64,000 bases of DNA. It comes from Antechinus flavipes (taxonomy: Eukaryota). The notes beneath the pieces are model-generated. The model saw only the letters and a list, made by a program, of their open reading frames with translations. It searched no databases and had not been told where the DNA came from. A program made the position numbers and the translations under genes. Shown piece after piece: positions 40,743 to 64,000 of this stretch (positions are counted from its first letter, which is position 1; each line of letters begins with the position of its first letter). The stretch lies in NCBI RefSeq assembly GCF_016432865.1, contig NC_067401.1, positions 190,526,001 through 190,590,000 on the forward strand. Reading direction: 5' to 3'.

Positions 40743-41483
40743 CTATGGGGGAGGATTTCCCTGCGTTGGAGTCTCATGGCCTAGAATTTGGGAGATCCCC
40801 AGACTGCTGCTTTCAACATCCATTTGATTCCCAACAACAACCACCTTATGCCCAGTACTTTCTCGGCTTAGGGGCTTCACTCCGAGGTTTTGGGTACACA
40901 GGAGGATGGAGGAACTTTGTTCAAAAGAGGGAGTAAGGCAAGAGGGAGGGATCCGGAGTTCTGGGGATGGGACCACAGGTTTCTAGAGCCACCCAATCAT
41001 AAGAGCAGCTGCCTGTCGTTCCTTTTCGTTGTCCGCAGGACCGATACAGTAGTAAGCTAGGACAGTGTCGAGCTTCGTGCATGCTAGCTGGGGACCTCAG
41101 GCCGCCTAGGGGAGCCTCTCCGCCTCTGGAGAGGCAAGGCCGTGCCCCACCATTCATCGACACTGTTCGCGGGGAGGGTAAGCGCCTACTTCTTCCTCCT
41201 GACGTCATACGGCCGCATGGAAAAGCCCCGCCTTCAAGTAAAGTCCTAGCGGGCCGGAAGGCGCCTTTCCGGGTCCCGTTTCTATCCAGAGAGCGTAGGG
41301 AGGCTTTGTGACGCAAAGAGGGCCGGGACTCTGGAAGCCCTTCCTCTTCCAGGAGCGTCAGCCGGCCCCAGTGTCCTCAGCGATGTCTTGGGCCTGGTCC
41401 TGCAGTTCCCGGGACGCCCCTGCTTCCCGAAGCAACCGGGCTACTTCCACTACCCCTTCCCGGGCAGTCAGGCAGAGCAGCGT
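40743..41483 (-). pseudogene. NOTCH4: NOTCH4 exon 30 remnant
   Basis: TLLCLTAREGVVEVARLLREAGASRELQDQA, frameshift, HWGRLTLLEEEGLPE..RHKA..DWVALETCG, second frameshift, IPPSCLTPS. The acceptor is missing. Confidence 0.85.
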
Positions 41484-41733
41484 GGAGGGGAGGGGAAGCA
41501 GACAGGTGGGGTCAGGGAAAGGCCACTCCCAGGGAGGTTCGATTCCTCCTAGACTTTCCGTCTTCCTACATCACGTGTCGACTCCGCCCAGTTTTCCTCC
41601 TTTTTTTTCCCTCTGCCCCCTCCTCTCCCTTCTCTTTTCCCTTCTCTCTTCTTCCTTTCTCTTCTTTCTTCCTCCTTCCCTTCCCCTCATCAGCCGCCCT
41701 TTGGACTTTGCCCCTCCTTTAAGAGACTTCACC

Positions 41734-41870
41734 CTAGGGGGCGCAGTGGATCGAACACCGGCCCTGAAGCCGGGAGGACCTGAGTTCAAATGCGATCTTA
41801 GACACGTAACACTTCCTGGCTGTGTGACCCTGGGCAAGTCACTTAGCCCCAACTGCCTCAGGGGAAAAAA
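41734..41870 (+). mobile_element. WSINE1-type tRNA-derived CORE-SINE
   Basis: CTAGG..GCGCAGTGGAT..GGAGGACCTGAGTTCAAAT (A/B boxes), core CTGTGTGACCCTGGGCAAGTCACTTA and A-tail. CpGs are retained. Confidence 0.88.
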
Positions 41871-41886
41871 AGCCATTCACCCTGAC

Positions 41887-41971
41887 CCTGCTGTCCTGAG
41901 CGTCCTTGTCTGCTCCTACCTGGAGTAGGGCATTGGCGGCTCAAACATTGTTTCCGCAGGGAAATGCCTTC
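41887..41971 (-). pseudogene. NOTCH4: NOTCH4 exon 29 remnant
   Basis: 85 nt (human about 98). Reads KAFPCGNNV*AANALLQVGADKDAQDSR with an in-frame TGA at 41943-41941. Confidence 0.85.
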
Positions 41972-43789
41972 CTAGGGAGGCAAAGAGCGATGAATCTGGA
42001 GTTGGGGTTGGGGTCCGTTGGGGGTAGATGACTGTGAGAAGTTTCTCCCGGCTTGGAAATAGGAGAAAAGGGACAGCTAGAGCTGGCATGGGGGTCCCTC
42101 TGCTGGTCAGTAGCGGGAAGCTTTATCGTGGAGATGGCGACCCGTGGGCAGGAAGTTTTGCGTCGGTGATGTCATCTTCTGAGACAATGGGGCTTTGTTT
42201 TGTGGCCTGGGAGATAGGGACCCCTCCTTCTTCTCCACCTCACTCCCCTCCTCCCCTCCCCTCCACCCTACCTCGCTCCCCTTCCCCGGCTTCCCCTCCT
42301 TCCTTCCCACTGCTTTCCCTGCTGGGTTGGACTTTGACAGGCAAACTGTCTGCTTCCTGGAGGCATCCCCCTGGATTCACCTACAGTCCAGTCCCTTAGC
42401 GAAACCCCGACGCTAAGCCTTATCTCCTCATCTCTCTCTCTGTTAGCTGATTTCTCCCTCACCATTCAGTTGAAACAGTACCCTTTTGTAGAGTGGCAGT
42501 ATTGACTTAAGTCCACGTACAGGAAGAGTCTGGTCCAGATATTACTAGAGACCTGCTCTCTATAAGGGCTGAACAACCCAAGGCATTGGTTCACTGACTC
42601 CCTTAACAATTTTTGAAAGACATACTTGGGATAAATTTAGAATAATCTTGATGGAGATTGCATGTGACAGGAACAAGGCATCACAACTGTGTTATTTACA
42701 ACCCTATTTTGAAAAATACCTTTGCTATTGATAATTTCTGTTATTGATGACTTTTATGATAGATATCTTGTTATTGTAGTTAAGGTGAATGAGAATAAGT
42801 TATTAATACCTTAAAAATAGGAAAAGCATAAAAATAAAATAAAAAATTTGGGGTGGTGAAGATTTTGGAGGTACAGGAAAAGAGGTGTTCTGCATGCAGT
42901 GTATCACTGGTTGTAAGCCATTTTTAAATAGAAATTAGAAGGGATAATTTAAATAATTATCAAAAATTGTTAAGGAAATCGTTGAGCCAATGCCTAGAAT
43001 TGTTCAGCCCTTACAAAGAGCAGATCTCAAGTAATACCTGGATTGGACTCTTCCTGTATATGGACTTCTTCAATACTGGCCCTCTATACCCTCCAAGATT
43101 ATTTATTTTTTTCTCACTCCTCATTTTCTCCTTCTAAAAGCTTTGCAGACTTTCTTCCTAAATACTATTTTTGTTTTCTTCCTCTGATCAGCTTCTCAGT
43201 CTTTGCCAGATCAGCATCTATGTTCTGCCCTCTAGGCTTAGATGCTGTATCAATTCTCTGTCCATTTTGATTATGTTTACACTTGATAATGGCATCAACT
43301 CCCACAGGCTTAATTATTAGATCTACAAGGGTAGCTCCCATATCAATATCTATATATCTAACTCTGATCTTTCCAGAACTCCAGTTCTATATCACCAATT
43401 AATGGCTCACTCATATCCATCAGATATCTTACTGGCATTTAAAAATTCAAAAATTTTCAGTTGCTCCTTAGCAGTTTTAGGATAAAATGCAAACCTCTTA
43501 GCCTAACAGTCCAAACTTTCTACAGATTTTCTCCAACCTGCCTTTCCAGACTTATTTCATATTATTTCCTTCAATGTGCTATAGTTCTAGACAAACTCTC
43601 CTATAATCTCCCCAAATATTGATATTCCATATCCTGTGTCTGTGCGTTTCTTCAGACTGTTCTCCATGGATTTCCTCTTTTTTTTTGCCTGTAGTTTCTT
43701 TTAAGGTATGGTTAAAGTGCTGTTTCCTGCGAGAAGATTGCTCCTCCTTCAAAATGCCTCATAATTTACTTTTTGTAATTATTATTTGT

Positions 43790-45365
43790 TATTATTAAAG
43801 CTTTTTATTTTCAAAACATACATGAATAATTTTTCAATATTAATCCTTGCATAGCCTTGTGTTTCAGATTTCCCCCTTTCCCCCACCCCCTCCTCTATCG
43901 CAAGCAACCCAACATATGTTATATATGTTAAAATATATATTAAATCCAATATGTGTAGACATATACAACTCTATTGCTGCATAAGTAAAATCAGATCAAA
44001 AAGGAAAGTAGTGAGTAAGAAAACAAAATGCAAGTGAATAACAACAAAAAGAGTAAGAATGTTATGGTTGTGATCCACATTCAGTTCCCATGGTCCTCTC
44101 TCTGGTTGTAGATAGCTCTCTTTGTCACAAGATCACTGGAACTGGCATCAGTCATCTTGTTGGAAAGAGTCACGTTTATCAGAATTGTTCATCGTATAAT
44201 ATTGATGTTGCCATGTACAATGATCTCCTGGTTCTGCTCATTTCACTTAGCATCCATTCATGTAAGTCTCTCTAGGCCTCTCTAAAATCATTCTCCTGAT
44301 CTTTTCTTATAGAACAATAATATTCCATAACATTCATATACCGTAACTTACTCACCCATTCTCCAACTGATGAGCATCTGCTCAGTTTCCAGTTTCTTGT
44401 CACTATAAAAAGGGTTGCCACAAACATTTTTGCACATGTAGGTCCCTTTCCTTCCTTTAAGATCTCTTCGGGATATAGACCCAATAGAAACACTGCTGGA
44501 TCAAATGGTATGCACAGTTTGATAGCCCTGTGGGCATAGTTCTAAATTGCTTTCCAGAATGGCTGGATCCATTCACAACTCCACCAATAATGTATTAGTG
44601 TCCCAGTTTTCCCATATCCCCTCAACATTTGTTATTATTTTTTCCTGTTATCTTAGCTAGTCTGAGAAGTGTGTAGTGGTATCTCAGAGTTGTCTTAATT
44701 TGCATTTCTCTGATCAATGGTGATTTAGAGGACTTTTTCATATGATTAGAAATAGTTTTAATTTCATCTGAAAATTGTCTATCATATCTTTTGATCATTT
44801 ATTAATTGGAGAATGGCTTGAATTCTTATAAATTTGAATAAATTATCTATATGTTTTAGAAATAAGGCCTTTATCAGAACCCTTATATGTAAAAATGTTT
44901 TCCCAATTTATTGCTTCCCTTCTGATCTTGTCTGCATTAGTTTTGTTTGTACAGACATTTTAAATTTTTAAAATTTAAATTGTACAGACAATTTAAAATT
45001 AAATTTTAAATTTAATATAATCAAAATTATTCATTTTTTGTTCAATTATGAGTTCCAATTATGTGTTCTTCTTTAGACACAAATCTTACTTTTTATGTCT
45101 AAATTATGAACCCATTTTGACCTTATCTTGATATGTAGTGTTAGGTGTGGGTCAGTGCCTAGTTTCTTCTATACTAGTTTCCAATTTTCTTAGTAGTTTT
45201 TGTCACATAGTGAGTTCTTATCCAAAAGCTGGGGCCTTTGCTATAGTTATTGACGATTTTGTCCTGTGATCCTAACTTATTCCATTGATCAATTACTCTA
45301 TTTCTTAGCCAGTACCAAATGGTTTTGATGACTGCTACTTTATAATATAGTTTTGGATCTGGCAG
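43790..45365 (-). mobile_element. LINE-1 3' fragment
   Basis: Poly-T/3' UTR plus a degraded ORF2 C-terminus (track ORF 44272-44493). Confidence 0.88.
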
Positions 45366-45484
45366 TAATTTACTTTTCTATGTACATGTGGTGTAATGGA
45401 AGCTGAAAAAGGACCTCCATTTTTTTCTTTGAACTCTCAGCAGCTAGCACAATGTCTTACCTGCAGTAAGTTCTTCTTCTTCTT

Positions 45485-46472
45485 CTTTTTTTTAAATTAA
45501 AGCTTTTTATTTACAAAGTATATACATGAGTAATTTTTCCAACATTGATCCTTGCAAAACCTTTTCTTCCAAATATTCCCCTCCTTCCCCCCACCCTCTC
45601 CCCTAGCTGGCAGGTAGTCCAATACATGTTAAATATGTTGAAATAAATGTAAGATTCAATATATATATATGTATATATATATATACACACATATTTATAC
45701 AGTTATTTTGTTGCACAAGAAAAATCAAGTCGAGAAGGAAGAAAAAGAAACTGAGAAAGAAAACAAAATGCAAGCAAATAACAGAGTGAGAATGCTATGT
45801 TATGTTCCACACTCACTTCCCACAGTCATCTCTCTGGGTATAGATGGCTTTCTTTTTGACTGAACAAGTGGAATTGGTTTGAATCATCTCATTGTTGAAG
45901 AAGCCACATCCCATCAGAATTGATTGTCATATAGTTTTGTTGTGGTATGTATAATGGTTCTGCTCATTTCACTTGACTTCAGCTCATGTAAGTCTCTCCA
46001 AGCCTCTTTGCAATCATCCTGCTGGTCATTTCTTACAGAACAATAATATTCCATAATATTCATATACCACAATTTATTCAGTCATTCTCCAATTGATGGG
46101 CATCCATTCAGTTTCCAGTTTCTGTCCACTACAAAGAGAGCTGCCACAAACATTTTGGCACATACAGGTCCCTTTCCCTTCTTTAGTATCTCTTTGGGAT
46201 ATAAGCCCAGTAGAAACACTGCTGGGTCAAAGGGTATGCACATTTGAATGGTTGGATCTGTTCACAATTCCACCAACAATGCATCAGTGTCCCAATTTTC
46301 CCATATCCCCTCCAACGTTCATCATTATCTTTTCCTGTCGTCTTAGTCAATCTTACAGGTGTGTAGTGGTATTTCAGAGTTGTCTTAATTTTCATTTCTC
46401 AGATCAATAGTGATTTGGAGCACCTTTTCATGTGGCTACAAATAGTTTCAATTTCTCCATCTGAAAATTGTC
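45485..46472 (-). mobile_element. LINE-1 3' fragment
   Basis: Poly-T, 3' UTR and ORF2-like KIKTTLKYHYTPVRL (46183-46395). Confidence 0.88.
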
Positions 46473-46619
46473 CACAGTAAGTTCTTAATTACTATATTGA
46501 GTGGAAGAATATCCTTGGTATTCCATCTTTAACTCATTGTCTTTTTTCCCACTTCAGTAATCTCCAGTTTACCAATCCTCCTTTTTAGAAGCCATTTGTC
46601 CCATCCCATTTGTCCTTAT

Positions 46620-46767
46620 CCCATTTGTCTCTGGCTCCTCTATCTGCTTGGGCATCAGTCAGCTCTTCTACCAGGTCTTCTGCAGCCAGCTGGGCAGCTA
46701 GCATGAGAGGTGTTGTCTCATTTTCTGTTCTAGCATCTATTGAAGTTTGATCACTTTGAAATAGGAG
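46620..46767 (-). pseudogene. NOTCH4: NOTCH4 exon 28 remnant (ankyrin)
   Basis: 148 nt, LLFQSDQTSIDARTENETTPLMLAAQLAAEDLVEELTDAQADRGARDKW. The donor reads G|ATAAG instead of GT. Confidence 0.9.
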
Positions 46768-46974
46768 CTAGAGTTGAGGGTATTGGGGATGGGCAGAGGA
46801 CAGTGGCTGTCTGAACTCACACAGCCTTGATATCTGAACAGTTTTGCTTTGCCTAACTTCCCTATCCTTCCCTTCCCATTCTTTTTTTCACTCATACTCA
46901 TTTTTATTCCATCCTTTTCTTCATCTTCTTTTAATTTTTTTCCCTACCCTTCTCTCTTTTTCATGTCCTAAACT

Positions 46975-47135
46975 GCCTTCATGGGTAATTTTTCAGCATT
47001 GACAATTGCAATACCTTTTGTTCCATTTTTCCCTTCTTTTCTCCCACCCCTTCCCCCAGATGGCAGGTTGACCAATATATGTTAAACATGTTAAAGCATA
47101 AGTTAAATACAATATATGTATACATGTCCAAGGTA
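46975..47135 (-). mobile_element. Short LINE-1 3' UTR fragment
   Basis: Same 3' UTR motif (GGGTAATTTTT..CATTGAC..TGCAA) as the neighbouring L1s. It lies where NOTCH4 exons 26-27 would be expected. Confidence 0.75.
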
Positions 47136-47211
47136 TGGACTTTTTTATCCCTCAGTTCCACACTAGATCCCAAGCCACTTCTTGGCCCAATCTCCATATC
47201 ATACTCTTTAC

Positions 47212-47746
47212 CTGGTATATTTCCTGTCTCTTTTCAGAGCTCAAGCAAATCACAACCCCATCCTCATCAGCCTCAGTCTCTGGCTTCAATGGCCTAGGAA
47301 AGAGAATGGAGCAAGGAAGGAGGATATGGGATTAGAGTTAACATGAAACTCTCAAGAACCTCAAGATCTAATTTTTGTGTCATAGATGACCTCTGCCATC
47401 TAATCGTACATGCTGATTTCATTCCTTCTGCCTTTAGGAGTCATTGTTTCCGTGAAATCATTATTTCTTCTTTCCCTTACTTCTTTCTCCATTTCTCTAG
47501 AGTCATTTGGGGGTATCTCCTGCTCTTACTTAAGTCCAATACTGGCGTCACCCAGAGGGGGCTGACGTCTACAGGAGGCAGGTTTTGTTTGAGGTCGAGG
47601 CCTCCTGGAGAAACCAGGGGGAAGCCACAGAGCACCATGTTCCTGGCACCTTCTCCGGATAAGCTGGAGGACCAGGAGTCTCCTCGGAACTAGGAGAATC
47701 ATCCCAGCCACTGGGGAAAAGAACACAGACCAGGGAAGCTGGAGGG
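47212..47746 (-). pseudogene. NOTCH4: NOTCH4 exons 24 (47746-47530) and 25 (47293-47212), TM and RAM
   Basis: LQLPWSVFFSPVAGMILLVPRRLLVLQLIRRRCQEHGALWLPPGF..IGLK / PLKPETEADEDGVVIC. Frames and GT-AG sites are intact, but the TM is interrupted by Pro-Arg-Arg. Confidence 0.92.
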
Positions 47747-48102
47747 CTGGGGAAGAGAAATGAAGACTGAATCAGAGAAAGATCCAGGAAGGCATACATG
47801 AAACAAATGTATCTATTCTAAGGAAGCTGCATCTAATACAGAGTGTAGACAGATAAGCAGAGAAATCAGGGTTAGTAGGAGGGACAGAGGATCAGTGAGG
47901 GAGAACAATCTCTCTACTGGCTATTCTGAGATTCTAGTCATTTTATTCCCTCTTGTGTAGACAGGAGTAAAATGATGTTCAATAGGTAGTTCTGGGAAAG
48001 GTGATAGATGAGTGTGGGATAAGATAATGGAGGATCTGTGACTGGTCTAAGATGGAGGGAAAATTCAAGAGAAAATTAAAAGCTGAGGGTGATAGCATCT
48101 AC

Positions 48103-48276
48103 CTGTGCCTTCTTGGGGATAGGCAACTCTCAGGGGCCCGGGCAGTAGAGTGTCTAGGCCCAACAGCAGCCATTGCAGCTAGGAAGGGGAGCAGAAAGCC
48201 TGGATCCCATTGGCATTGGGGGGCAGGAGGGGCAGAGCCACAGCAGGATGAATCTATCCCTAGCACCACCATAAAT
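48103..48276 (-). pseudogene. NOTCH4: NOTCH4 exon 23 remnant
   Basis: 174 nt (human about 176). FMVVLGIDSSCCG..WDPGFLLPFLAAMAAVG, then a frameshift before LLPGPL. Confidence 0.88.
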
Positions 48277-48365
48277 CTATATGAGTGGAAGCATGAGCAT
48301 TTAGTTATTTGGGCACCGGTTAGCTGCCCCTGTCCCTAGCCCTACTTTTTCCTAATCTTCCTTAT

Positions 48366-48530
48366 CTAGCAGGGCGGGTGTCAGTCTCGTTGCTGAACAG
48401 GTGTGTGTGTGGGTACTGTTCTTTCATGAGGTGGGTGGTTCCTATTTCTGGGAAGCTCTTCTTCGGTTTGTGGTCCAGGGTAAGGGAATACTATCTCTCT
48501 GCTTGGTCCCTTGAGGCCAGGAGCCAGGGT
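48366..48530 (-). pseudogene. NOTCH4: NOTCH4 exon 22, 3' remnant
   Basis: REIVFPYPGPQTEEEL..ER.. then a frameshift to NETD. The 5' part of the exon (about 220 nt) is absent and the donor reads AG|ATAAG. Confidence 0.75.
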
Positions 48531-48571
48531 TGGCTGTTACATTACTCTTTCTTTCCCCCAGTGTTCCTCAC

Positions 48572-49070
48572 GAGCAAATTTGGGATGTCTCACAATTGTA
48601 GCCATCAGACAGACACGCCATGGGTGACACTGCCCACCTCTGAAGGAGAGCCAGCATTGAGCATGGAGAGGACAGCCCTTCCAGGGATCTGGGATCCCCA
48701 GGGAACAGTCTCCCCCATCCCAGGCACCCTCAGGACCACTGCAGTCAGGATCACAGGCCCCATCTCCATATCGGCCTTTATATTCCTCTGCCTCTGATGT
48801 TTGGCATCAGGATTCCAGGAACAGTAGAAACTAGCGCTACCAGGGCCCTTTCCTCCATGGGACTCTAGCTGCCATTGCGTAGGCAAGGGGAAGGAGATCT
48901 ACAACTGTGAGTGACTGGAGGAAGCAGGCAATCAGGACCCCCATAGCCTTTGAGGCAAACACAGTAAGGGATAGATCCTGGCTGGGAAGAGGATAGACTG
49001 AAACCCCCAGGATGGCAGTGGTGGGGGCCATAGGAAGGAACTCCATGGAGACAGATGGGACCTTCAAAGT
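48572..49070 (-). pseudogene. NOTCH4: NOTCH4 exon 21 remnant (EGF/LNR)
   Basis: FEGPICLHG..CVCLKGYGGPDCL..SPCLRNGS* (TAG at 48867-48865, replacing Cys). Later GDGACDPDCSGPEGAWDGGDCSLGIPDPWKGCP, then a frameshifting deletion. 499 nt versus about 524 in human. Confidence 0.92.
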
Positions 49071-49313
49071 CTTGGATGGAGACGGGGAAAAAAAGTTAAG
49101 ACTAAGGACTCTGGACAGCTCATTCTCTATGGAACCTTTTTTTTTTTTTTAGGGCTTGATAAATTGTTTTATTGACTATGTAAATATAAAATAGAGATAT
49201 AGAAAAATGTAAATAATACATGTTAAACTTTAAAATTCATTTTGTGTATAATTTTTTTTGAGAACTGGTTATTAAACATTTACCAGCACACCCCTGACAT
49301 AGCCTTTCTTTCC

Positions 49314-49345
<32 letters not shown>

Positions 49346-49792
49346 AGCTTTTTATTTACAAAGTGTATGCATGAAAGCTGGTGCCCTATTGATCTTTTTG
49401 GTAGTAGGAAATTCCAAATTCTGGGAAAAAGCCTTCAAAGTGGGATTTCATTCAATTGGGAGATCTTGGTCTGATAATCAGCTCAAACAGCCCCCAGCCC
49501 AAGATTTGCTTATAAAATAGATTTCTGTTAACACTTTCTTTGCAGATCTCCTCATTATGAGATTTGTCCTAAGAGAGAGCTTCTTAGTGAAAAATAAAAC
49601 TTTTTTTTTTTTTTTTTGCCACTAAGATTTCAGCTTCCTGAATTCTTTTCACATTGGACTGTGCAGAGTCCAGAGAGGATTCTCACATCAATTCTCACAC
49701 CTCAGTTCTCTACCACTAGAACTGCATCAATATGATTGTATTCCCACTCCTCCAAGCTCCCTGAATCTTTCTTGTACCTCAGTCCCTCTCAT

Positions 49793-49977
49793 CTGGCAGA
49801 AGTACCCAGTGGGATGGGCCAAACATGTAGCCCCATGCTGGCAGGGCCTCAACTCACATACGTTCACTTTGTCCTGGCATGAGCTGCCTTGGAACCCAGG
49901 TGGGCACTGACAGAAATGGAACATACTAGTGTCCATGCAGAGCCCTCCATTCTGACACAAGGAAGAGATCTCTATGC
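49793..49977 (-). pseudogene. NOTCH4: NOTCH4 exon 18 remnant (EGF)
   Basis: 185 nt open frame, GIEISSLCQNGGLCMDT..FCQCPPGFQGSSCQDKVNVCELRPCQHGATC..YFCQ. The donor reads CAG|ATGAG. Confidence 0.92.
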
Positions 49978-50829
49978 CTAGGGAGAGGTGGAAAAAAAAA
50001 GGGAGGGATATCATAGAAGAAGTGAGGAGGGATCAGCCCAATGGAATGTTTAGATAAGAGCAGTGAGAAAGGAAAATAGCCATTCTCTTCTGGATTATTA
50101 CATTCCTGGTTTAAGCAGAGAATTTTCTTGAGCCTGAGAAACCTTGGCAGGCAATAGATTAAAATCACAATCTGTCTGCCCCTCCCCCAAGATTATGAGT
50201 GATAGATGGTATCTATTAAATGAAAAATTTTCTATAACTCCAAGAATATAGGATGTAGTTATATTGTATCGGGCTATTTTCAGCTGAGTTTAATGTAGTT
50301 GCGTTGTCTTGGGAGTGACTGACCAATCCTGCAAATTCTTTTGAGACACCTCATGATACCAGTCTATGACCCCAGACTTTTGGAGTCCCCTTTTCCAACC
50401 TCAAAACTAATAACATCTTGGGAATTTTCCTCTCAGTCTGTTCTCTTTGTCACTAGTAAATATTCTAGAAAGCTATGTTTCCTTGAGGGGCTAATAGGGA
50501 AAAGGAAAAATAACAGTATGAGTCTTAGGTCATTTGAGTTGAGAAATGTCAATTCTGAAGTGGAAACGTTGGGTGATGGTAGTGAGAAAATTAGAGAATC
50601 AGCCTGGGATCCAAGTGCCTAGAGAAAAATATTTTCAAAGTTTAAGTGGTCTGAAATTTGGGTATAGTAATAGGATCTAACGATTCCTGGGCATATATTT
50701 GGACAAAATGAAGGCTCAGCTCAGAGAAGGCCTCTGATGGGCAGAGGAGAATTGGAAGGCCTTATCATGTCCATTGGTATTTTGTTCCCCAGAGACAGGA
50801 GTGGCTTTAGGAGTGGGCTTTGGTAACAG

Positions 50830-51800: not shown

Positions 51801-52484
51801 ATGATTTGATTACATTGATAGAAAGGTCACAAAGGTGCTAAAATTATGAAATGAATCAACTAATAGACAAAAAATAGCCAACCATAACAAGTAAGAATAT
51901 ACCCTCCTCAACTTCTGTATTAAAATAACAGCTGGTTGCCTATCTCAGTTATATCCTAACTTCTTAGTCATATCATTGCCATCCTAAATGTTTTAGCATA
52001 GGTTTGGTGATTTGTGTGATGGCCTAAAACACTAGCCTAAAATAACAGAGGCAGAAAGAACAGAAGCTATAGGTGAAGGAATTGAAAATTGAGAACAACA
52101 CTAACTTCATCTTCTGACTCAATACTGGGTCTAGCTCAGTTCCCTTTCTATTCAGTTATGGATCTAGTTCAGTTTCTGTATTATGAGAACACTATTCAAC
52201 CATAGGAACTGTGAGAAAATTTACTGCATTGTTTGAACCTAACCCTGTGTGGCTGTGAAGCTGGATCACCTCTACTTGTTGTTTAGAGACAAAATTTGTC
52301 TGATGCTTAAGATCTAGGTTATATTGATCAGAAACTCAATCAGATCTGGGAGTTTTCTCATAATTCTCATAAGTACATATTTCAATCAATCTACATGTCT
52401 TATCTGAAAATTGGCCTCATACTAGTCAGGTACTGTTTCCTTCTTTCTTTGATTGAATATAGATATTTGAGGAGGAGTGGGACA

Positions 52485-52486
<2 letters not shown>

Positions 52487-52526
<40 letters not shown>

Positions 52527-54759: not shown

Positions 54760-55275
54760 TGTTATGGGCCAGAACTTTGAACTTGAAACAAGGATGCTTA
54801 TAAGGTACTAATTAAGTGGGATTAATGAGACAATGGTTATCTAGTTTAGCATGGTTCAGTTGATTTAATCTTACAACAAATAATGATTTCCTAGAGATAT
54901 AATGAAGGTTTATACTCAGTGTGGTGAATAAGCAGGGACTGAGAGCTACAGAAGACAAGCGCACTAAGAGCTCTTGGAGCCAAGGAGACAGAGATTCATT
55001 TCCACCTTCAGTCAGGCTCCTGGTAGTAGGCTCTCCTCCTGCATTTCTCCACTGAGACCAAGGCTGGTCTGAAAGGGACGAGAAAGCTGCCCAGCCCAGG
55101 AAGGAGATAATAAAGGATCTGGACTATAAGAAAGCTAACCCCCTCCAGGAAAGGAGAAAAGACTTTGAAAGAGATAATAAAGGATTTGGACTTTAATACC
55201 TGACTGTACTTGTGGTGATTACTCTGAATTGAAACGAAGGCTGCTCCCAAGAAAACGGAAACAGAGAATATTACA
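54760..55275 (+). mobile_element. Solo ERV LTR, 516 bp
   Basis: TGTTATGGGCCAGAACT...ATATTACA with a 6-bp TSD CATATA (54754-54759, 55276-55281) and an internal AATAAA. Confidence 0.88.
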
Positions 55276-55753
55276 CATATAGGTTCTAGATCTTCATTAG
55301 ATTGAAATTTTAAGAGGGCAGGGATGGTGTTTCATCTAAATTTTATATCTCCCCTAGCCCCTAAACTAATGTTTTATATTGTAGATACTTGAAAAATATT
55401 TTAAATACAATTTTTTAATATTGAATTAGTGGCAGAATTCTTATCAAACAAAAACTGGTGAGAACTGTATAATTTAGAAGCACTAGATGGTAATAGCATA
55501 CAGTTTATTTAAAACAAAAAGAAAGTGAAAGACTTGAAAATAAAATTAGACAATCATAAAGGATATCATGGGCAAAGCCTTCACTTTTTGGCCATTGATA
55601 TACTGATCTGCTTTTCTTTCATGGGAGAGCCAGCTGTTGGTATTTGATTAGGAAGGGATCCTGTGATATACAGGAAGACTTGCAAACAAATTTTCAAAGA
55701 TACAGAGAAGCCTACTTTCCAAAAATATGAGGGAAATAGTCCTAAAAATAACA

Positions 55754-55980
55754 GGGCAGCTAGGCAGCAAAGCTAGGCACTAGACCTGGAGTCAGGAAAA
55801 TTCATCTGCCTGAGTTCAAATCTAGACTCAGAAATTTCTTGACAAATAATTTAATCATGTTTGCTTCAGTTTCCTCATTTGTAAAATGAACTGGAGGGGA
55901 AAAAAAGCAAACTATTTTAGTATCTTCCCCAAGAAAATCTCAAATAGGTCATAAACAGTTGGACGTGACCCAACAACAAC
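55754..55980 (+). mobile_element. Mar1/CORE-SINE
   Basis: GGGCAGCTAGG..CTGGAGTCAGG..CTGAGTTCAAATC head, core and CAA tail. Confidence 0.7.
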
Positions 55981-57014
55981 AAAGAGAAATGAAATCTGGG
56001 AGACAAAGAAACAGTGATTCAAAGGGCTATGTATTTTGCGGTTAGAATTGTAGAATATCAGAGATGGATGGGACCTTAGACACCATCTAGCTGACAGAAG
56101 TGAAAATTTTAATAGAAAAATCTTAATATTAGTGAATGCCTGTGAATTAGCAGGCCAATTATGTCTAAGTATCCACTTACCACCACTATTGCCACCTGGT
56201 TTGCTAGACTTACAATCACTTCCCTACCCAGATCTTCTCCCCCAAACCCTTCCACTTCTCTGTGCTCATAAGTTATCCAGTGCTATTCCCATACCTGGAG
56301 GACAAAGGCAATAGAATATAACAAGAAGGTCAACACAAGTGCTGCCAGGAAATAAATTCAAGTTTTTATATTTAATAGTTCTATGATGATGGGAAAGTAA
56401 TTTTATCTTTTTGAGCTCAATTTCTTCATCTATAATATAAAAATAACAATACCCGCACTATTCAGAGTTGTGGTGAAATTGTGGTGTTGTAAATTTTAAA
56501 GTCAGTCAATTAATATTTATGTTATGTCTGCTTAGTGCCAGGTACTGTACAAAGCTCTAAATGGGAGTTGTAGCATGCCTTTAATATGTCATTAAACTTA
56601 AATGCAATTGAAGCTGAACATGATTAATTATATCATTACATGTTCCTATAAATATGGATTTTTGATCAATTTGGATTTTTTGCCCCTCCTGAAGAATCCG
56701 ATATCCTTGATCTTATCTAGTATAATCCTTCCATTTTACAGATTAAGAAACAAAGGCTCTGAGAAAGAAAGTGTCATTGTTTTTATATCTAATAAATAGA
56801 AATAGCAGGATTAGTATCCAGGTTTGGTGAGGCTACATCCAGTCCTGTTTGTGGGAGAACAGAAAATTCTAAATCTGAGTAAAGTATTGTATGTAGCGTT
56901 TCAGTTGCTTGTCCAAAGCCTTGGTTTGGGATTTATAGATAGATCTAACAGGTATTGGCAAAAGGAGGGCCCATTGAGATCATTTGGTCCAGACCTCTCA
57001 CTTATCTTTTCTTT

Positions 57015-59245
57015 TCTTTTCTTTTTTTTTTAATTATAGCTTTTTATTGACAGGACATATGCATGGGTAATTTTTGCAACACTGTCCCTTGCACTCAATT
57101 CTGTTCAAACTTTTCTCTTCCCTCCCTCTACCTCCTCCCCTAGATTGCGGGCAGTCTTATACATGTTAAACATGTTAAAGTATGTCTTAGATACAATATA
57201 TATGTACAGATCCATACAATTCTCTTGTTGCATAAGAAAAATTGGATTCAGAAGGTAAAAATAACTTGGGAAGAAAAACAAAAATGCAAGTAGTCCACAT
57301 TCATTTCCCAGTGTTCCTTCTCTGGGTGTAGCTACTTCTGTCCATCATTGATCAATTGATCAATAGATCTTCTCTTTGTCAAAAATTTCCACTTCCATCA
57401 GAATACATCTTCATACAGTATTGTTGTTGAAGTGTATAATGATCTCCTGGTTCTGCTCATTTCATTCAGCATCAGTTCATGTAAGTCTTTCCAAGCCTCT
57501 CTGTATTCATCCTGCTGGTCATTTCTTACAGAACAACAATATTCATATACCACAATTTACCCAGCCATTCTCCAATTGATGGACATCCTTTCATTTTCCA
57601 GTTTCTAGCCACTAGAAACAGGGCTGCCACAAACATTTTGGCACATACAGGTCCCTTTCCCTTCTTTAGTATTTCTTTGGGATATAAGCCCAGTAATAGC
57701 ACTGCTGGATCAAAGGGTATGCCCAGTTTGATAACTTTTTGAGCATAGTTCCAAATTGCTCTCTAGAATGTATGTTTTCCCGCATCCCCTCCAACATTTG
57801 TCATTATCTTTTTCTGTCATCTTAGCCAATCTGACAGGTGTGTAGTGGTATCTCAGAGTTGTCTTAATTTTCATTTCTCAGATCAATAGTGATTTGGGAC
57901 ATCCTTTCATATGAGTAGAAATAGTTTCAATTTCATCATCTGAAAATTGTCTGTTCATATCCTTTGACCATTTATCAATTGGAGAATGGCTCGATTTCTT
58001 TTTTTTTTTTATTTAATGATTACTTTATAATGACAACATTATTCCTTGCACTCGTTTCTTTTCCGATTTTTTCCCCCTCCCTCCCTCCACCCCCTCCCCT
58101 AGATGGCAAGCAGTCCTTTATATGTTGGATATGTTGCAGTATATCCTAGATACAATATATGTTTGCAGAACCGAACAGTTCTCTTGTTGCATAGGGAGAA
58201 TTGGATTCAGAAGGTATAAATAACCCGGGAAGAAAAACTAAAATGCAGATAGTTCACATTTGTTTCCCAGTGTTCGTTCTTTGGGTGTAGCTGCTTATGT
58301 CCGTCATTTATCAATTGAAACTTAGTTAGGTCTCTTTGTCAAAGAAATCCACTTCCATCAAAATATGTCCTCATACAATATCGTTGTCGAAGTGTATAAT
58401 GATCTCCTGGTTCTGCTCATTTCACTTAGCATCAGTTCATGTAAGTCTCGCCAGTCCTCTCTGTATTCATCCTGCTGGTCATTTCTTACAGAACAATAAT
58501 ATTCCATAACATTCATATACCACAATTTACCCAGCCATTCTCCAATTGATGGGCATCCATTCGTTTTCCAGTTTCTAGCCACTACAAATAGGGCTGCTAC
58601 AAACATTTTGGCACATACAGGTCCCTTTCCCTTCTTTAGTATTTCTTTGGGATATAAGCCCAATAGAAACACTGCTGGATCAAAGGGGATGCACAATTTG
58701 ATAATTTTTTGGGCATAATTCCAGATTGCTCTCCAGAATGGTTGGATTCGTTCACAACTCCACCAACAATGCATTAGTGTCCCAGTTTTCCCGCATCCCC
58801 TCCAACATTCATCATTATTTTTTCCTGTCATCTTAGCCAATCTGACAGGTGTGTAGTGGTATCTCAGAGTTGTCTTAATTTGCATTTCTCTGATCAATAA
58901 TGATTTGGAACACTCTTTCATATGAGTGGTAATAGTTTCAATTTCATCCTCTGAAAATTGTCTGTTCATATCCTTTGACCATTTATCAATTGGAGAATGG
59001 CTTGATTTCTTATAAATTAGAGTTGTTTCTCTATATATTTTGGAAATGAGGCCTTTTCAGAACCTTTAACTGTAAAAATGTTTTCCCAGTTTGTTGCTTC
59101 CCTTCTAATCTTGTTTGCATTAGTTTTGTTTGTACAAAGGCTTTTTAATTTGGTATAACCAAAGTTTTCTATTTTGTGATCAATAATGATCTTTAGTTCT
59201 TCTTTGGTCATAAATTCCTTCCTCCTCCACAAATCTGAGAGCAGA
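57015..59245 (-). mobile_element. Two tandem LINE-1 3' fragments (57015-57990 and 57991-59245)
   Basis: Each has a poly-T and 3' UTR. The 203-aa track ORF 58358-58969 is the L1 ORF2 C-terminal region (QIKTTLRYHYTP..HCWWSC..PSIGEW). Confidence 0.92.
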
Positions 59246-59655
59246 CCTCTCATTTTTCTGACAAGGAAATTGAAGATTGAGAGGGGAAGTGAATTAAACA
59301 TAATGACAAATAATGAATCAATGACTGAAACAGGTCCTGGTTAAAGAATGCTCAGCTTTCTTCTAATGGCAACAAAGCAACTTGATTGACTGGCAATGAG
59401 GCTCTCTTGATTGTACAAATGGATTTTTTTCTTAATTAAGATATGAAATCATACCAGGGAATGGACAGACTGTTCTTTATATAATTCAGAAAGCTGATAA
59501 AACTTTTCAATTTAAGATTAAGGGACCATTGTTTTGTAAACTTTATCATTTTTTCATTGCATCTTTGGATGTTCTCTGGTCTTGATAACCATCTACTATG
59601 TTTAATAAGTTTAAATCCTTTCAAAAACTTTGAAAAGGTATTGTGCCTAGTTGAA

Positions 59656-59656
<1 letters not shown>

Positions 59657-59702
<46 letters not shown>
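59657..59702. repeat. (GT)n microsatellite
   Basis: Perfect run. Confidence 0.95.
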
Positions 59703-59704
<2 letters not shown>

Positions 59705-60189
59705 AATACTATGTTTAGAATCCATAGCTGGGCTGGGAAAAGTTAATTACTAGTTGGTAATTGGGGGGTAGCAATGAGAAAATGAAGGGACTGGTTTGAC
59801 CTTGGATCTCAGGAAATAAATATTTTGGGGATATACTCATTTAGCACTATAGTACCAAGAAATCAGTGTCCCAACTATATTCTTAACTGTACCTTCCTCC
59901 CATCCCTCAATCTCCCATTCTCATTTTATCTTCCTATTTCTATATAGAAATCCCCCAGTGCGTAATCAGGCTTTTGTCTCAGGGGGTCAGCAGTGGTTCA
60001 GGTGAAGTTAACTATGCTATCTGCCTTCCTTAGTCTTTAGAATTATGAATGAGCTGCTGGAAACCGACCTGAGATCTGATCAGCTGAATGGACAGTGGAT
60101 TGCACTTTGCTTTTTGCCTCTCTGGTTGCTGTCACTTCCCTACCCAGATCTTCTCCTTGCTCATAGGCTATCCAGTGCTATTCCCATAC

Positions 60190-60358
60190 CTGGAGGACAG
60201 AGGCAGTGGAATGTAGCAAGCAGGTCAGGACAAGTGCTGCCAGGGCCACTCATTGTGGTCCCTCTCATAGCGGGAGCCTATATAGCCTAGGGAGCAGAGA
60301 CCATTGAAGGTGTTCATGCAAGAACTGCCATGTTCACAGGGACTAAGGCTTTGGTGGA
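60190..60358 (-). pseudogene. NOTCH4: NOTCH4 exon 8 remnant
   Basis: SPCEHGSSCMNT-FNGLCSLGYIGSRYERDHNE, frameshift, PGSTCPDLLATFHCLCPP. The acceptor reads GG. 169 nt versus about 195 in human. Confidence 0.88.
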
Positions 60359-60654
60359 CCAAGAAAAGAGTGGAATGTATTTTAGGGGACAATGAAGAAG
60401 ATATATAAAGATGAGGAGGGCATATGGATAGGGAATAGAAACAGGAAAATGGAAACATATTTGATAAGGAACCTGATGATATAGTGGTGTAATAGATTTC
60501 TATACTAGATTTGGGATCAGAGGATTCCAGTTCTGGCAGTGTGATTTCATTTAACTTAAGCCTCACTTTCCTTATCTGCAAAAGAAGGGGAAGGACTAGA
60601 CTACATTACTCTCTGAAACTTCTTTCCAGTTCAGTCCATGATATTAAAAATAAC

Positions 60655-60890: not shown

Positions 60891-61656
60891 AATGATTTTA
60901 AATAGTACTTTATGGTTTTCAAATTGCTTTTCTCATGCTCAGTGAAGAAGATAGTACAAATCTTATAGGAAGGAAATTGAAACCTTCAAGCAAGGACGGA
61001 AACAAGCATTTATTAAGAATTTACTATGTGCCAGACATTGTGCTAAGTGCTTTACAAATATGTCATTTGATTTTCACAACAATCTTGGAAGATAAGTACC
61101 ATTATTATCCCCATTTTATAATTGAGGAAACTGAGGCAGGGAGAAACTTGCTCATGGTTGCAGAGTTAAGTCTGAAAATATATTTGAATTCTTGTTCAAA
61201 GCAGAAAGCTTCTAGACCCAGGGCTCTATCTACTGTGTCACCTAGCTGCCTTACCATTTAAGAGATTATAAGTGAATTATCCAAGGTCCATTAGCTGGAA
61301 GAGTCATGTCTTTTTATTCTGGCTCCAGTGCCCTTTCCATTATACCACATTGCCTTTGTGGGGGATGGAGAAGAGGAAATGTCTCTCTGTGGGGATGTTA
61401 AAGGTAATGTCCAAAGGGGATTAAACAGCAGAAAATCAAAGGGGAGAGTATAGAGTAAAGATGTAATGGCTTGGAAAAATTCCAGAAATATTCAGGGAAA
61501 AAAAGGTGTGCTTTTTTTCTCCTGGGAAACTGGAAAAACCTGAGAAAGTATAGGAAAATCTAATTTTCTATCCTTGGCTTTTCTATTTCTTCCGTGGGAA
61601 ATGGAGGGGGGTGGGAGGTCAGCTTAGCTGTAGAATTGAATACTGAGGTTTCTCAC

Positions 61657-61808
61657 CCATCTGACATTCATCCAGATCCTGGTGTCAGGTGGGCCCCGGA
61701 GTAGCCAGTCTGACATAAAGTATGACTCCTGAGATGGGATTGGTACTATGTTGGGCTTTGGGGTGGCAGGGCTGACTCAGACATATATCCTGTAGCTGCA
61801 CAGAAGAC
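61657..61808 (-). pseudogene. NOTCH4: NOTCH4 exon 7 remnant
   Basis: LLC/LQDICLSQPCHPKAQHSTNPISG/CQTGYSG/PT*HQDLDECQM with several frameshifts and TGA at 61687-61685. 152 nt versus about 156 in human. Confidence 0.88.
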
Positions 61809-61821
61809 CTAGAGTGGGAAG

Positions 61822-61822
<1 letters not shown>

Positions 61823-61877
<55 letters not shown>
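61823..61877. repeat. (GA)n microsatellite
   Basis: Perfect run; it explains the ERERER track ORF. Confidence 0.95.
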
Positions 61878-61880
<3 letters not shown>

Positions 61881-62759
61881 GACTGTGTTCCTTATGTTAC
61901 TTTATATCCTTTCTAGAGGTTTCTGAATCTTCCTGCTTACTCCTTGTCACTCCCTATTTTTCTTTTTTCTTTTCCTATTCCTCCCCCAGTCTTCTGCTTT
62001 TATATTCTCCCATCTTCCCATTTCTTTTTTGTGATCTTCCTGTGACTCCTTGTGTAACTCATTATCTTTTCCTCATAATTTACCTTTCTTCCCAATTGCT
62101 CTGTTTCTGTTGAAGAAATCACTATTCTTCCAATCTCTTAGGTCTATGAACTTGGTGTTTTTTTCAAATCTTCACCTTTGGCCCTTATTGCCTCTTGCTT
62201 CTATTACTATAGCATTTTCCTCATTGTTCTGCCTGTCCTGATTTCCTGTTCCTGTCCAACTTACACATTGCTGCCAAAGAGATTTTTCCTTAAATGTACA
62301 TTTGACATAGCACTTTCCTATTCAGTCAATTTCAATGATTCCCTGTAGTCTCTAAGATCAATATAAACTTTTCTCTTCAGCTTTTAGAACCCTACACAAC
62401 CTGTTCACAACCTGTGTTTCTAGACTCACTGGATATTACTCCTCTTCCTGCATGTTTTAGTCTAGCCAAACTGGCTTTCTTTTTGTTCCTCACATGTAAC
62501 ACTCCATCATCCCATTCATACTTTTGCACTAGCTATGTAGCCCTTGCCTAGAATGTAATTCTTAACTCTGCCTAAGAGAATTTCTCTTTGCCTTCAGAAT
62601 ATCTAACTCTAGTATCACCTTCTGCATGAAACCTTTTTTGATCCCCATTAGCTATGAGTGCCCTCCTTCCCAAACTTATGTTGCTGTTCAGTGATTTCTA
62701 GCTCTGTGTGATGCCATGGACTTTGGCTAACAGATTTTCTTGGTAAAGATATTGGAATG

Positions 62760-63340
62760 TATTTTGGGCCAGAACTCTGCACTTGAAACCAGGATTCTTA
62801 CAAGGTGTTAAGTTAGTGGAATTGATAAGTCAATGGTTATCTAGTTTAGCACAGTGGTTAATAGTTCTCTAGTTCAGTACATGTACTTAGTACTTAATAT
62901 AGGTCTATAAGATTGATACTTATTCTACAAGATTGACACCTATGATGATGTAATTATAATAGAGCATATAAAGCTGGGACACTCAGCCAGCCAGATTCAC
63001 TCCATCTCACACCACTGTGGTGGCAGACCTGTCCTCCTTCATTTCTCCACTGAGACCAAGACTCAGGAAGGCCTCCAAGAAAGCTAGCCTGAGCCCCAGG
63101 CAAGGAGACAGACTCAGAGAGACATTCCATCTTTGATCGGGCTCCTGGTGGGTCTCCTTCATTTCTACAGTGAAACCAAGTCCGGTCTGAAAGACCTTCA
63201 GAAAGCTGGTCCAGGCCCCAAGCAAGAAAACTAGACTTTTTAAAGGAGGCAATAAAGGTTTTGGACTTTATCCCTGGCCATTCTCATGGCGATTACTCGG
63301 CTGAAACAAAGGCTGCTCCAAGACCAACCAGAACATTACA
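62760..63340 (+). mobile_element. Solo ERV LTR, 581 bp, same family as 54760-55275
   Basis: TATTTTGGGCCAGAACT...ACATTACA (terminal TG mutated) with a 6-bp TSD GGAATG (62754-62759, 63341-63346). Confidence 0.85.
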
Positions 63341-63808
63341 GGAATGAATTCTCATTTCCTTTTCCAGTGTGTCCCCATTTTACAGATGAGGAACTGAGGC
63401 AAAAAGGGTAAAGTGATTTGCCCAGGGTTACATAGCTAGTCTCTGAGGCCAGATTTGACTCAGATCTTCCTGATTCCAGCCCAGCACTCAATCTACTGCT
63501 TTCCCAAAACAAGTCAATACTTAATTATTTTGTATCCTCTTTACATTAATTTTCCATTAATTCAAGATCCCTTATATTCATGTGTTCCTATGCCCATACC
63601 ATTGCCTCCTGAGTTTTCCCAATGTCCTTTTATCAATCAATAAACATTAGGTACCTACCATGTACCAGGCAGTGTACCTTTCATATCTCCTTTTCTTCCC
63701 CTATAGCCTCATATTTCTATGACTCTTACAATGAGATGGAGAGAGGAAAAAAGGCATTTGTTAAATGTCCATCTCCCTCACTCCCACAATGTCCCTTCAG
63801 CTTTGTAC

Positions 63809-63980
63809 CTATGAGACCTGCGGGACAGAGGCAAGGGAAGGAGCCCATCCTATCAATACATGTAGATCCCCAGGCATAGGTGGCAGAAGCACAGGTTTTC
63901 CTCATAGTTTGAGTTTCCCCAGTCCCCAAAGGGAACACAGTTTCATGCCCCCAGATTGAAGTAGTTACAGAAGTCTGAGA
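63809..63980 (-). pseudogene. NOTCH4: NOTCH4 exon 6 remnant
   Basis: EENL, frameshift, CASATYAWGSTCIDRMGSFPCLCPAGLIG|GT. Probable stop at 63945-63943. The 5' boundary is uncertain near the window edge. Confidence 0.8.
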
Positions 63981-64000
63981 TCTTTGCCCCTTTTTCCCCA

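What the first reader, a model, noticed from the sequence alone, without database searches (positions are those of the whole stretch)
40743..64000. NOTCH4 is a long-dead unitary pseudogene in this marsupial MHC class III region
All seven neighbours are intact or nearly so. The syntenic NOTCH4 has independent lesions in at least 10 exons: stops (63945, 61687, 48867, 41943), frameshifts (exons 6, 7, 8, 21, 22, 23, 30), dead donors (49792, 48365, 46619) and lost acceptors (exons 8, 30). Conserved cysteines are also substituted. This many dispersed lesions cannot be base-call noise and implies an old loss. Established: eutherians have four NOTCH paralogues, NOTCH4 is endothelial-enriched and is the MMTV int-3 mammary oncogene, and Notch4-null mice are viable. 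A naturally three-NOTCH mammalian lineage is a useful natural knockout. I do not know whether this loss has already been reported.
Basis: partly seen in the sequence, partly recalled or inferred. Interest (0 to 1): 0.85.

Follow-up and report, generated by a model that had tools for sequence, protein, structure and literature searches.

The report
Dead NOTCH4 gene in a dasyurid marsupial
The Notch-family receptor gene NOTCH4 sits in its normal place in this carnivorous marsupial's MHC but is a thoroughly wrecked relic; the same gene was already listed as a pseudogene in the Tasmanian devil in 2012, so this is real but only modestly new.

Summary
On the minus strand of 40.7-64.0 kb, next to intact GPSM3 and PBX2, lie the remains of NOTCH4. 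These are in-frame stops at 63945, 61687, 48867 and 41943, frame-breaking indels in exons 6, 7, 8, 21, 22, 23 and 30, dead donors at 49792, 48365 and 46619, and lost acceptors of exons 8 and 30.

The decay is worse than reported. Of the 25 exons expected in the window (6-30), 13 are undetectable on either strand: exons 9-17, 19-20 and 26-27. Most of exon 22 is deleted, and L1 fragments are inserted. No EGF array, complete NRR or ankyrin domain can be encoded.

With platypus as outgroup, this lineage carries 3-4 times more private amino-acid changes than eutherian NOTCH4. That fits tens of millions of years of neutral drift.

It is not new in kind. Cheng et al. 2012 list a "NOTCH4 pseudogene" beside PBX2 in the Tasmanian devil. 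Gene lengths here differ from the devil's by about 0.3-1.3%, so this is a close dasyurid relative. Opossum expresses NOTCH4, so the loss is probably dasyurid-specific, not marsupial-wide.

Untested: whether an intact copy lies elsewhere in the genome, and whether any lesions are shared with the devil.

The parts
63804..63956 (-). NOTCH4 exon 6 remnant (EGF8-9)
   Evidence: Matches NOTCH4 profile positions 337-384. TGA at 63945-63943 is in the aligning frame, and an 8-nt deletion near 63894 shifts the frame.
61649..61843 (-). NOTCH4 exon 7 remnant (EGF10)
   Evidence: 45-59% identical to NOTCH4 proteins. TGA at 61687-61685 replaces a conserved Cys. Several other Cys are lost and the net indel is -4. 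The AG acceptor and GT donor are still present.
60179..60362 (-). NOTCH4 exon 8 remnant (EGF11-12)
   Evidence: Profile positions 434-503 fall in two different frames. There is a 9-nt in-frame deletion and a 17-nt deletion near 60246. The acceptor reads GG, while the GT donor at about 60188 is intact.
56216..56352 (-). Duplicated fragment of the 3' end of exon 8 plus the start of the intron
   Evidence: 87% identical to 60150-60244. It matches the same profile positions, 481-503.
49988..60178 (-). Interval where exons 9-17 (EGF13-22, about 390 aa) should lie; none is detectable
   Evidence: No profile match with E<1 on either strand. The interval contains L1 3'-end fragments at about 57.0-59.3 kb. 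The alpaca gene has nine exons in the equivalent 7.2 kb.
49790..49987 (-). NOTCH4 exon 18 (EGF23-24), open frame but dead donor
   Evidence: 69-72% identical to eutherian NOTCH4, against 46% or less for NOTCH1-3. No indels. The acceptor AG is intact. The donor reads AT at 49792-49791.
49075..49789 (-). Interval where exons 19-20 should lie; none is detectable
   Evidence: No match to profile positions 953-1072.
48571..49074 (-). NOTCH4 exon 21 remnant (EGF28-29, LNR-A and LNR-B)
   Evidence: Pfam LNR domain and PDB NOTCH1/3 NRR matches. 71-73% identical to NOTCH4 over LNR-A. There is a stop at 48867 and the frames run 0>2>0.
48366..48503 (-). 3' third of exon 22 (HD-N); the 5' two-thirds (LNR-C) are deleted
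   Evidence: Profile positions 1331-1368 only. Only alpaca exon positions 248-370 of 381 can be aligned. The donor reads AT at 48365.
48098..48281 (-). NOTCH4 exon 23 remnant (NODP/HD-C)
   Evidence: Pfam NODP. Profile positions 1375-1436 fall in two frames, with a 2-nt deletion at 48158. The tammar wallaby NOTCH4 overgo probe matches 48128-48093 at 35 of 36 bases.
47529..47753 (-). NOTCH4 exon 24 (transmembrane segment and RAM), open frame
   Evidence: 68-70% identical to eutherian NOTCH4 and weak or absent against NOTCH1-3. The acceptor AG and a GTAAGA donor are present.
47200..47292 (-). NOTCH4 exon 25 remnant
   Evidence: Profile positions 1509-1539. 74% DNA identity to alpaca exon 25 with no indel.
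46768..47199 (-). Interval where exons 26-27 (ankyrin repeats 1-3) should lie; absent
   Evidence: Only 432 nt remain between exons 25 and 28, and nothing matches profile positions 1540-1680.
46612..46767 (-). NOTCH4 exon 28 (ankyrin repeat), open frame, donor lost
   Evidence: 69-71% identical to NOTCH4. Weak Pfam Ank match, below the gathering score. No GT at or after 46619, and a 15-nt tandem duplication sits there.
44150..46520 (-). L1 3'-end fragments inserted between exons 28 and 29
   Evidence: Repeat families D1-D5 and D8 are shared with 57.0-59.3 kb. The ORF pieces carry the Cys-rich C-terminal motif of L1 ORF2; this identification is from knowledge, as Pfam gave no match.
41887..41952 (-). 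NOTCH4 exon 29 remnant (ankyrin repeat)
   Evidence: 73% identical to NOTCH4 with TGA at 41943-41941. The donor GT is retained.
40743..41483 (-). NOTCH4 exon 30 remnant (last ankyrin repeat and NOTCH4-specific tail)
   Evidence: Profile positions 1765-1980 are spread over three frames. The acceptor reads AC. There are frame shifts near 41373 and 40950.
35372..36378 (-). GPSM3, the intact 3' neighbour (synteny anchor, not part of the pseudogene)
   Evidence: Three coding exons are open, and the two larger are 70-87% identical to the eutherian GPSM3 sequence carried in NOTCH4-GPSM3 read-through models. GoLoco motifs are weak Pfam matches just under the gathering score.

Best explanation
This is the orthologous, intron-containing NOTCH4 gene at its ancestral MHC class III position, now a non-functional pseudogene.

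Shown here:
- At least four premature stops and at least nine frame-breaking indels.
- Five destroyed splice sites.
- Complete absence of 13 of the 25 exons expected in the window.
- No Notch receptor can be made: the ligand-binding EGF array is missing, LNR-C is deleted, and ankyrin repeats 1-3 are gone.

Inferred:
- The gene stopped being maintained tens of millions of years ago, roughly 15-60 My.
- It then decayed by point mutation, small indels, large deletions and L1 insertion.
- The loss happened in the dasyurid lineage and is the same event as the 'NOTCH4 pseudogene' annotated in the Tasmanian devil.
- NOTCH1-3 cover Notch signalling, as they do in viable Notch4-null mice.
For: Synteny and orientation match human, with Pfam-supported neighbours.

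Identity as NOTCH4:
- Summed tblastn scores are 614-745 bits for mammalian NOTCH4 against 340-400 for NOTCH1-3.
- The TM/RAM exon and the tail of the last exon match NOTCH4 well and NOTCH1-3 weakly or not at all.
- LNR and NODP domains are present.

Lesions:
- The missing exons are shown.

Age:
- With platypus as outgroup there are 110-127 window-private changes against 24-43 eutherian-private changes over about 650 sites, chi-square 29-67.
- 56 of 290 otherwise invariant positions are changed.

Literature and species:
- The devil MHC table lists 'NOTCH4 pseudogene' upstream of PBX2 in the same orientation.
- PBX2, AGER and AGPAT1 lengths are within about 0.3-1.3% of the devil's.
Against: - No whole-genome search was possible, so a second, intact NOTCH4 elsewhere is not excluded.
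- Exons 1-5 and the promoter lie beyond the window end and were not seen.
- No read-level or second-assembly confirmation was obtained: look-ups of window ORFs in public assemblies found nothing.
- Sharing of lesions with the devil was not tested. Only a table entry was available, and its 3.7-kb extent does not map simply onto this window.
- Several exons (18, 24, 25, 28) still have open frames at about 70% identity, so a residual transcript or peptide cannot be ruled out.
- The age estimate depends on assumed neutral rates and on alignable, hence better preserved, segments.
Confidence: 0.87

Rival explanations
1. The loss is much older and wider. NOTCH4 died before the marsupial radiation, or at least in the ancestor of all Australian marsupials, so every marsupial is a three-NOTCH mammal.
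For: Two protein searches that returned about 20 eutherian, one platypus and many reptile NOTCH4 proteins returned no marsupial NOTCH4.
Against: - Those searches scored only 8000 candidates and recovered a minority of eutherian NOTCH4 clusters, so the blank is weak.
- NOTCH4 is reported as developmentally up-regulated in opossum lung.
- The opossum and wallaby MHC maps treat NOTCH4 as a class III gene.
- A 36-nt tammar wallaby NOTCH4 exon 23 probe differs from this window at one base. That is far less than about 60 My of neutral drift would give, although probe choice favours conserved stretches.
- Stop and indel densities suggest roughly 15-30 My of neutrality (inference).
Confidence: 0.08
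2. This locus is the decayed leftover of a duplication or relocation, and an intact NOTCH4 functions elsewhere in the genome.
For: Nothing positive. It is simply not excluded, because only this 64-kb window could be read.
Against: - The remnant occupies the ancestral position with ancestral neighbours and orientation.
- The devil MHC study annotates only a pseudogene.
- No dasyurid NOTCH4 protein appeared in the searches.
Confidence: 0.04
3. The lesions are assembly or base-calling artefacts in a functional gene.
For: No independent reads were checked.
Against: - There are no N runs in the window.
- The lesions are of many kinds and dispersed over 23 kb, and the flanking genes are clean.
- 13 exons are replaced by other sequence, including L1 fragments.
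- There is an excess of amino-acid change even in the open exons.
- An independent BAC-based study of a close relative reached the same call.
Confidence: 0.01

Closest known systems
Tasmanian devil 'NOTCH4 pseudogene' (BAC C12G5, FQ790241, 84027-87750; Cheng et al. 2012, BMC Genomics 13:87, PMC3414760)
   Same: Same position upstream of PBX2-AGER-AGPAT1-EGFL8-PPT2 and same orientation as PBX2. It is called a pseudogene. Neighbouring gene lengths and spacings are within about 0.3-1.3% of this window.
   Different: It is only a table entry of 3.7 kb, with no lesions described and no discussion. Here the remnant spans more than 23 kb and has an exon-by-exon lesion map. The species is apparently a different dasyurid. 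Shared lesions were not tested.
Functional eutherian and monotreme NOTCH4 (for example alpaca, 30 coding exons, 1990 aa; platypus, 1844 aa)
   Same: Retained exons are 57-73% identical in protein and 72% in DNA. The exon boundaries and the flanking GPSM3 are the same.
   Different: 13 exons are missing. There are stops, frame shifts and dead splice sites, and no complete EGF array, NRR or ankyrin domain.
Notch4-null laboratory mice (viable and fertile; from established knowledge, not tested here)
   Same: A mammal living without NOTCH4 function. This explains why the loss could be tolerated.
   Different: That is an engineered allele in one strain. Here the loss is natural, fixed and old.
Other class III gene decay noted in this genome (NFKBIL1, scan note s1-198791)
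   Same: A syntenic class III gene reported dead in this species and the devil but intact in other marsupial orders.
   Different: A different gene about 0.7 Mb away. It is an unchecked note and I did not examine it.

Membership tests
Unitary pseudogene of NOTCH4 | Lies at the ancestral syntenic position of the gene | tested here: met
   The order PPT2(+), EGFL8(+), AGPAT1(-), AGER(-), PBX2(-), GPSM3(-), NOTCH4(-) is as in human. Neighbours are identified by Pfam domains and by GPSM3 alignment. The 5' neighbour lies outside the window.
Unitary pseudogene of NOTCH4 | Orthologous to NOTCH4 rather than to NOTCH1-3 or another EGF gene | tested here: met
   Summed scores are 614-745 bits for mammalian NOTCH4 against 340-400 for NOTCH1-3. 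Exon 24 and the tail match NOTCH4 well and NOTCH1-3 weakly or not at all.
Unitary pseudogene of NOTCH4 | Retains introns (not a processed copy) | tested here: met
   Remnant exons are spread over 23 kb in the alpaca exon order. AG and GT are recognisable at several boundaries.
Unitary pseudogene of NOTCH4 | Multiple independent disabling lesions | tested here: met
   4 stops, at least 9 frame-breaking indels, 5 lost splice sites and 13 absent exons.
Unitary pseudogene of NOTCH4 | No functional copy elsewhere in the genome | not testable with these tools
   Only the window is readable. The scan's notes on this genome mention no other Notch locus, but they cover about 1% of it.
Unitary pseudogene of NOTCH4 | Evolves without constraint | tested here: met
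   Relative-rate test with platypus as outgroup: 110-127 against 24-43 private changes, chi-square 29-67. 7 of 45 invariant Cys are lost.
Functional Notch receptor | Continuous EGF-repeat ectodomain including the ligand-binding repeats | tested here: not met
   Only fragments of EGF8-12, 23-24 and 28-29 remain. Exons 9-17 and 19-20 are absent.
Functional Notch receptor | Three LNR modules plus heterodimerisation domain | tested here: not met
   LNR-A and LNR-B are present but frame-shifted. The LNR-C part of exon 22 is deleted. HD remnants are frame-shifted.
Functional Notch receptor | Intracellular RAM plus seven ankyrin repeats in one open frame | tested here: not met
   The RAM exon is open, but exons 26-27 are absent, exon 29 has a stop, and exon 30 has lost its acceptor and frame.

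The most novel reading that the evidence does not exclude
The loss is fixed across the whole family Dasyuridae (devil, quolls, antechinuses, dunnarts) and perhaps in related orders. That would make a clade of about 70 species natural NOTCH4 nulls for 20 My or more. Together with the reported NFKBIL1 decay, it would point to a burst of class III gene loss in the dasyurid stem lineage.
Probability: 0.55. Interest if true: 0.45.

Novelty: new member of a known kind. Interest (0 to 1): 0.3.

Why it matters
NOTCH4 is the endothelial-enriched, fastest-evolving Notch paralogue, and mice tolerate its loss. A mammalian family that has lived without it for tens of millions of years would be a natural experiment on how far NOTCH1-3 compensate. 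It could also inform work on vascular biology and on the cancer-prone dasyurids.

The practical value here is smaller:
- an exon-level lesion map that can be used to date the loss across marsupials;
- a warning that 'NOTCH4' gene models or expression values in dasyurid data sets should be treated as a pseudogene.

The basic fact has been in a published table since 2012.

Tried and rejected
- A protein search with the 151-aa C-terminal piece found nothing.
- The representative search with the LNR piece gave only 38 hits. The best was an unnamed eutherian-like genomic ORF (P0001/L001), with 67% DNA identity in exons and introns that cannot be aligned, so it is not a marsupial.
- Two searches from snake and platypus NOTCH4 supplied the eutherian and platypus references but no marsupial NOTCH4. 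I treat this as inconclusive because only 8000 candidates were scored.
- Exact look-up of ten window ORFs in public assemblies, meant to find independent contigs of this or related species, found none.
- The Atlas look-up of the TM/RAM exon gave no usable hit.
- A metagenome scan for a 24-mer shared with wallaby found nothing.
- Fetching the devil, koala or opossum locus through a neighbour's protein would have required typing a spliced protein that has no reference. That step was left out.
- I considered that the missing exons might be inverted or on the other strand. A profile search of all six frames of the whole window rejected this.
- I considered that the 56.3-kb EGF piece was a further exon. 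It is rejected: it is an 87% DNA duplicate of the end of exon 8 plus intron.


Full report
**Setting.** The window has no N runs. Its first 40 kb carries, in human order and orientation:
- PPT2 (+)
- EGFL8 (+, EGF_CA)
- AGPAT1 (-, acyltransferase)
- AGER (-, weak Ig-domain matches)
- PBX2 (-, PBC and homeodomain)
- GPSM3 (-, GoLoco motifs just below Pfam's cut-off)

These assignments rest. All three GPSM3 coding exons are open, and the two larger ones are 70-87% identical to eutherian GPSM3. In human, NOTCH4 follows GPSM3 on the same strand. That is where the finding lies.

**Identity.** Stop-to-stop pieces on the minus strand of 40.7-64.0 kb contain EGF modules, an LNR module (Pfam, 39 bits; PDB NOTCH1/3 NRR), a NODP piece and an ankyrin repeat. 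I obtained reference proteins stepwise:
- The LNR piece retrieved reptile NOTCH4.
- A snake NOTCH4 and then the platypus NOTCH4 retrieved about 20 eutherian NOTCH4 clusters.

Summed best tblastn scores over the remnant exons are 614-745 bits for mammalian NOTCH4, 428 for turtle NOTCH4 and 340-400 for NOTCH1-3. The TM/RAM exon and the tail match NOTCH4 well and NOTCH1-3 weakly or not at all. The locus is therefore NOTCH4, not a paralogue, and it is not a processed copy, because the pieces are separated by introns with recognisable splice signals.

**Exon map.** An alpaca NOTCH4 locus (L002) resolves into 30 coding exons. I searched a profile of 11 mammalian NOTCH4 proteins against all open pieces. 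It places the remnants as follows:

| Exon | Window coordinates |
|---|---|
| 6 | 63956-63804 |
| 7 | 61843-61649 |
| 8 | 60362-60179 |
| 18 | 49987-49790 |
| 21 | 49074-48571 |
| 22 (3' third only) | 48503-48366 |
| 23 | 48281-48098 |
| 24 | 47753-47529 |
| 25 | 47292-47200 |
| 28 | 46767-46612 |
| 29 | 41952-41887 |
| 30 | 41483-40743 |

Exons 1-5 would lie beyond the window end.

All were found.
- *Stops.* 63945 is in the frame that aligns to the first half of exon 6. 61687 replaces a conserved Cys codon. 48867 and 41943 are also present.
- *Frame breaks.* These appear as frame switches between adjacent protein matches. They also appear as indels whose lengths are not multiples of three in DNA alignments to the alpaca exons. 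They comprise an 8-nt deletion near 63894; a net -4 in exon 7; 17 nt lost near 60246; several in exon 21 (frames 0>2>0); several in exon 22; 2 nt lost at 48158; and at least two in exon 30 (near 41373 and 40950). Individual indel placements at 72% DNA identity depend on the alignment, especially in exon 30, so I count only those also seen as frame switches.
- *Donors.* The donors after exons 18 and 22 read AT. After exon 28 there is no GT, and a 15-nt tandem duplication sits there.
- *Acceptors.* The acceptors of exons 8 and 30 read GG and AC.
- *Cysteines.* Of 45 cysteines invariant in ten eutherians and platypus, 7 are replaced.

**What the summary did not say.** Of the 25 exons expected in the window, 13 are undetectable: exons 9-17, 19-20 and 26-27.
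- No profile match better than E=1 exists in the intervening DNA or anywhere on the plus strand.
- The retained exons still score 57-73% identity, so uniform decay cannot explain the gaps. These exons were deleted.
- Only 432 nt separate exons 25 and 28, and only about 70 nt separate exon 21 from the surviving part of exon 22.
- Repeated L1 3'-end fragments occupy 44.1-46.5 and 57.0-59.3 kb. The L1 identification is from knowledge of the ORF2 C-terminal motif, because Pfam has no model for it.
- A 135-nt piece of the end of exon 8 plus its intron is duplicated at 56.2-56.35 kb, at 87% identity.

The locus therefore cannot encode the ligand-binding EGF array, a complete negative regulatory region or ankyrin repeats 1-3.

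**Age.** With platypus as outgroup, the window lineage has 110-127 private amino-acid changes. Each of ten eutherians has 24-43, over about 650 shared sites (chi-square 29-67). In addition, 56 of 290 otherwise invariant positions are changed. I converted the excess with ordinary mammalian neutral rates, and did the same for the densities of stops (4 in about 770 codons) and frame-shifting indels. This gives roughly 15-60 My. It is an inference with wide error, and it is biased young because only alignable segments are counted.

**Species and prior knowledge.**
- Cheng et al. 2012 list a 'NOTCH4 pseudogene' in devil BAC C12G5, upstream of PBX2, AGER, AGPAT1, EGFL8 and PPT2.
- Start-to-stop lengths here against the devil are 3714 vs 3675 bp for PBX2, 2926 vs 2966 for AGER and 3437 vs 3446 for AGPAT1. 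Start-to-start spacings agree within 1%.
- The window therefore comes from a close relative of the devil but not from the same sequence. Other notes of this scan call the genome the yellow-footed antechinus. I could not verify the species name.
- No paper in the searchable library discusses the loss beyond that table entry.

**Extent of the loss.**
- NOTCH4 is reported as up-regulated during opossum lung development (supplement of PMC6173930).
- The wallaby MHC study used a NOTCH4 probe designed from tammar reads. That probe matches exon 23 here at 35 of 36 bases. This is far fewer differences than about 60 My of neutral drift would give, though probe design favours conserved stretches.
- These points favour a loss within Dasyuromorphia rather than in all marsupials.
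- The absence of marsupial NOTCH4 proteins from my searches is not evidence, given their limited recall.

**Not done.** I made no whole-genome search for a second copy, no read-level check and no alignment to the devil or other marsupial loci. The tools gave no route to those sequences without typing a spliced protein, and that step was left out.

**Verdict.** The finding is a further, well-documented instance of a loss already recorded in the devil, and is of modest interest.

Noticed in passing
window 56216-56352 vs 60132-60244: A short segment holding the 3' end of NOTCH4 exon 8 and the first bases of its intron is duplicated 3.9 kb downstream, at 87% identity. It is an old local duplication inside the dead gene.
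   Followed up: partly
window 44150-46520 and 57010-59300: Four to five truncated copies of one L1 3' end (66-94% identical to each other) lie in the same orientation as the gene. They sit beside or within the intervals from which exons have vanished, which would fit L1-associated deletion.
   Followed up: no
window 46604-46633: A 15-nt tandem duplication (GACAAATGGGAT...) sits exactly at the former donor of exon 28.
   Followed up: no
window 61825-61880: A long (CT)n microsatellite directly abuts the still-intact acceptor of exon 7.
   Followed up: no
window 48093-48128: The tammar wallaby NOTCH4 overgo probe (Siddle et al. 2011, Table S1) matches at 35 of 36 bases. The PBX probe matches PBX2 at 31902-31941 at 38 of 40. 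This is a small hint that NOTCH4 stayed constrained well after dasyurids and diprotodonts split.
   Followed up: partly
proteins P0081, P0184, P0199, P0202 (eutherian NOTCH4 models): Several eutherian 'NOTCH4 isoform' gene models end in GPSM3 sequence with GoLoco motifs. They are NOTCH4-GPSM3 read-through models that splice out of the last NOTCH4 exon. They were useful here as a GPSM3 reference but misleading as NOTCH4 C-termini.
   Followed up: partly
proteins P0007, P0070-P0074, P0203: Squamate and turtle genomes carry annotated NOTCH4 of only about 1560-1650 aa. NOTCH4 is therefore not mammal-specific and has a shorter EGF array in reptiles.
   Followed up: no
window 29966-33679, 24929-27854, 10835-14271: The start-to-stop spans of PBX2, AGER and AGPAT1 differ from the published devil BAC coordinates by only 39, 40 and 9 bp. 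This places the genome close to, but not identical with, the Tasmanian devil.
   Followed up: partly
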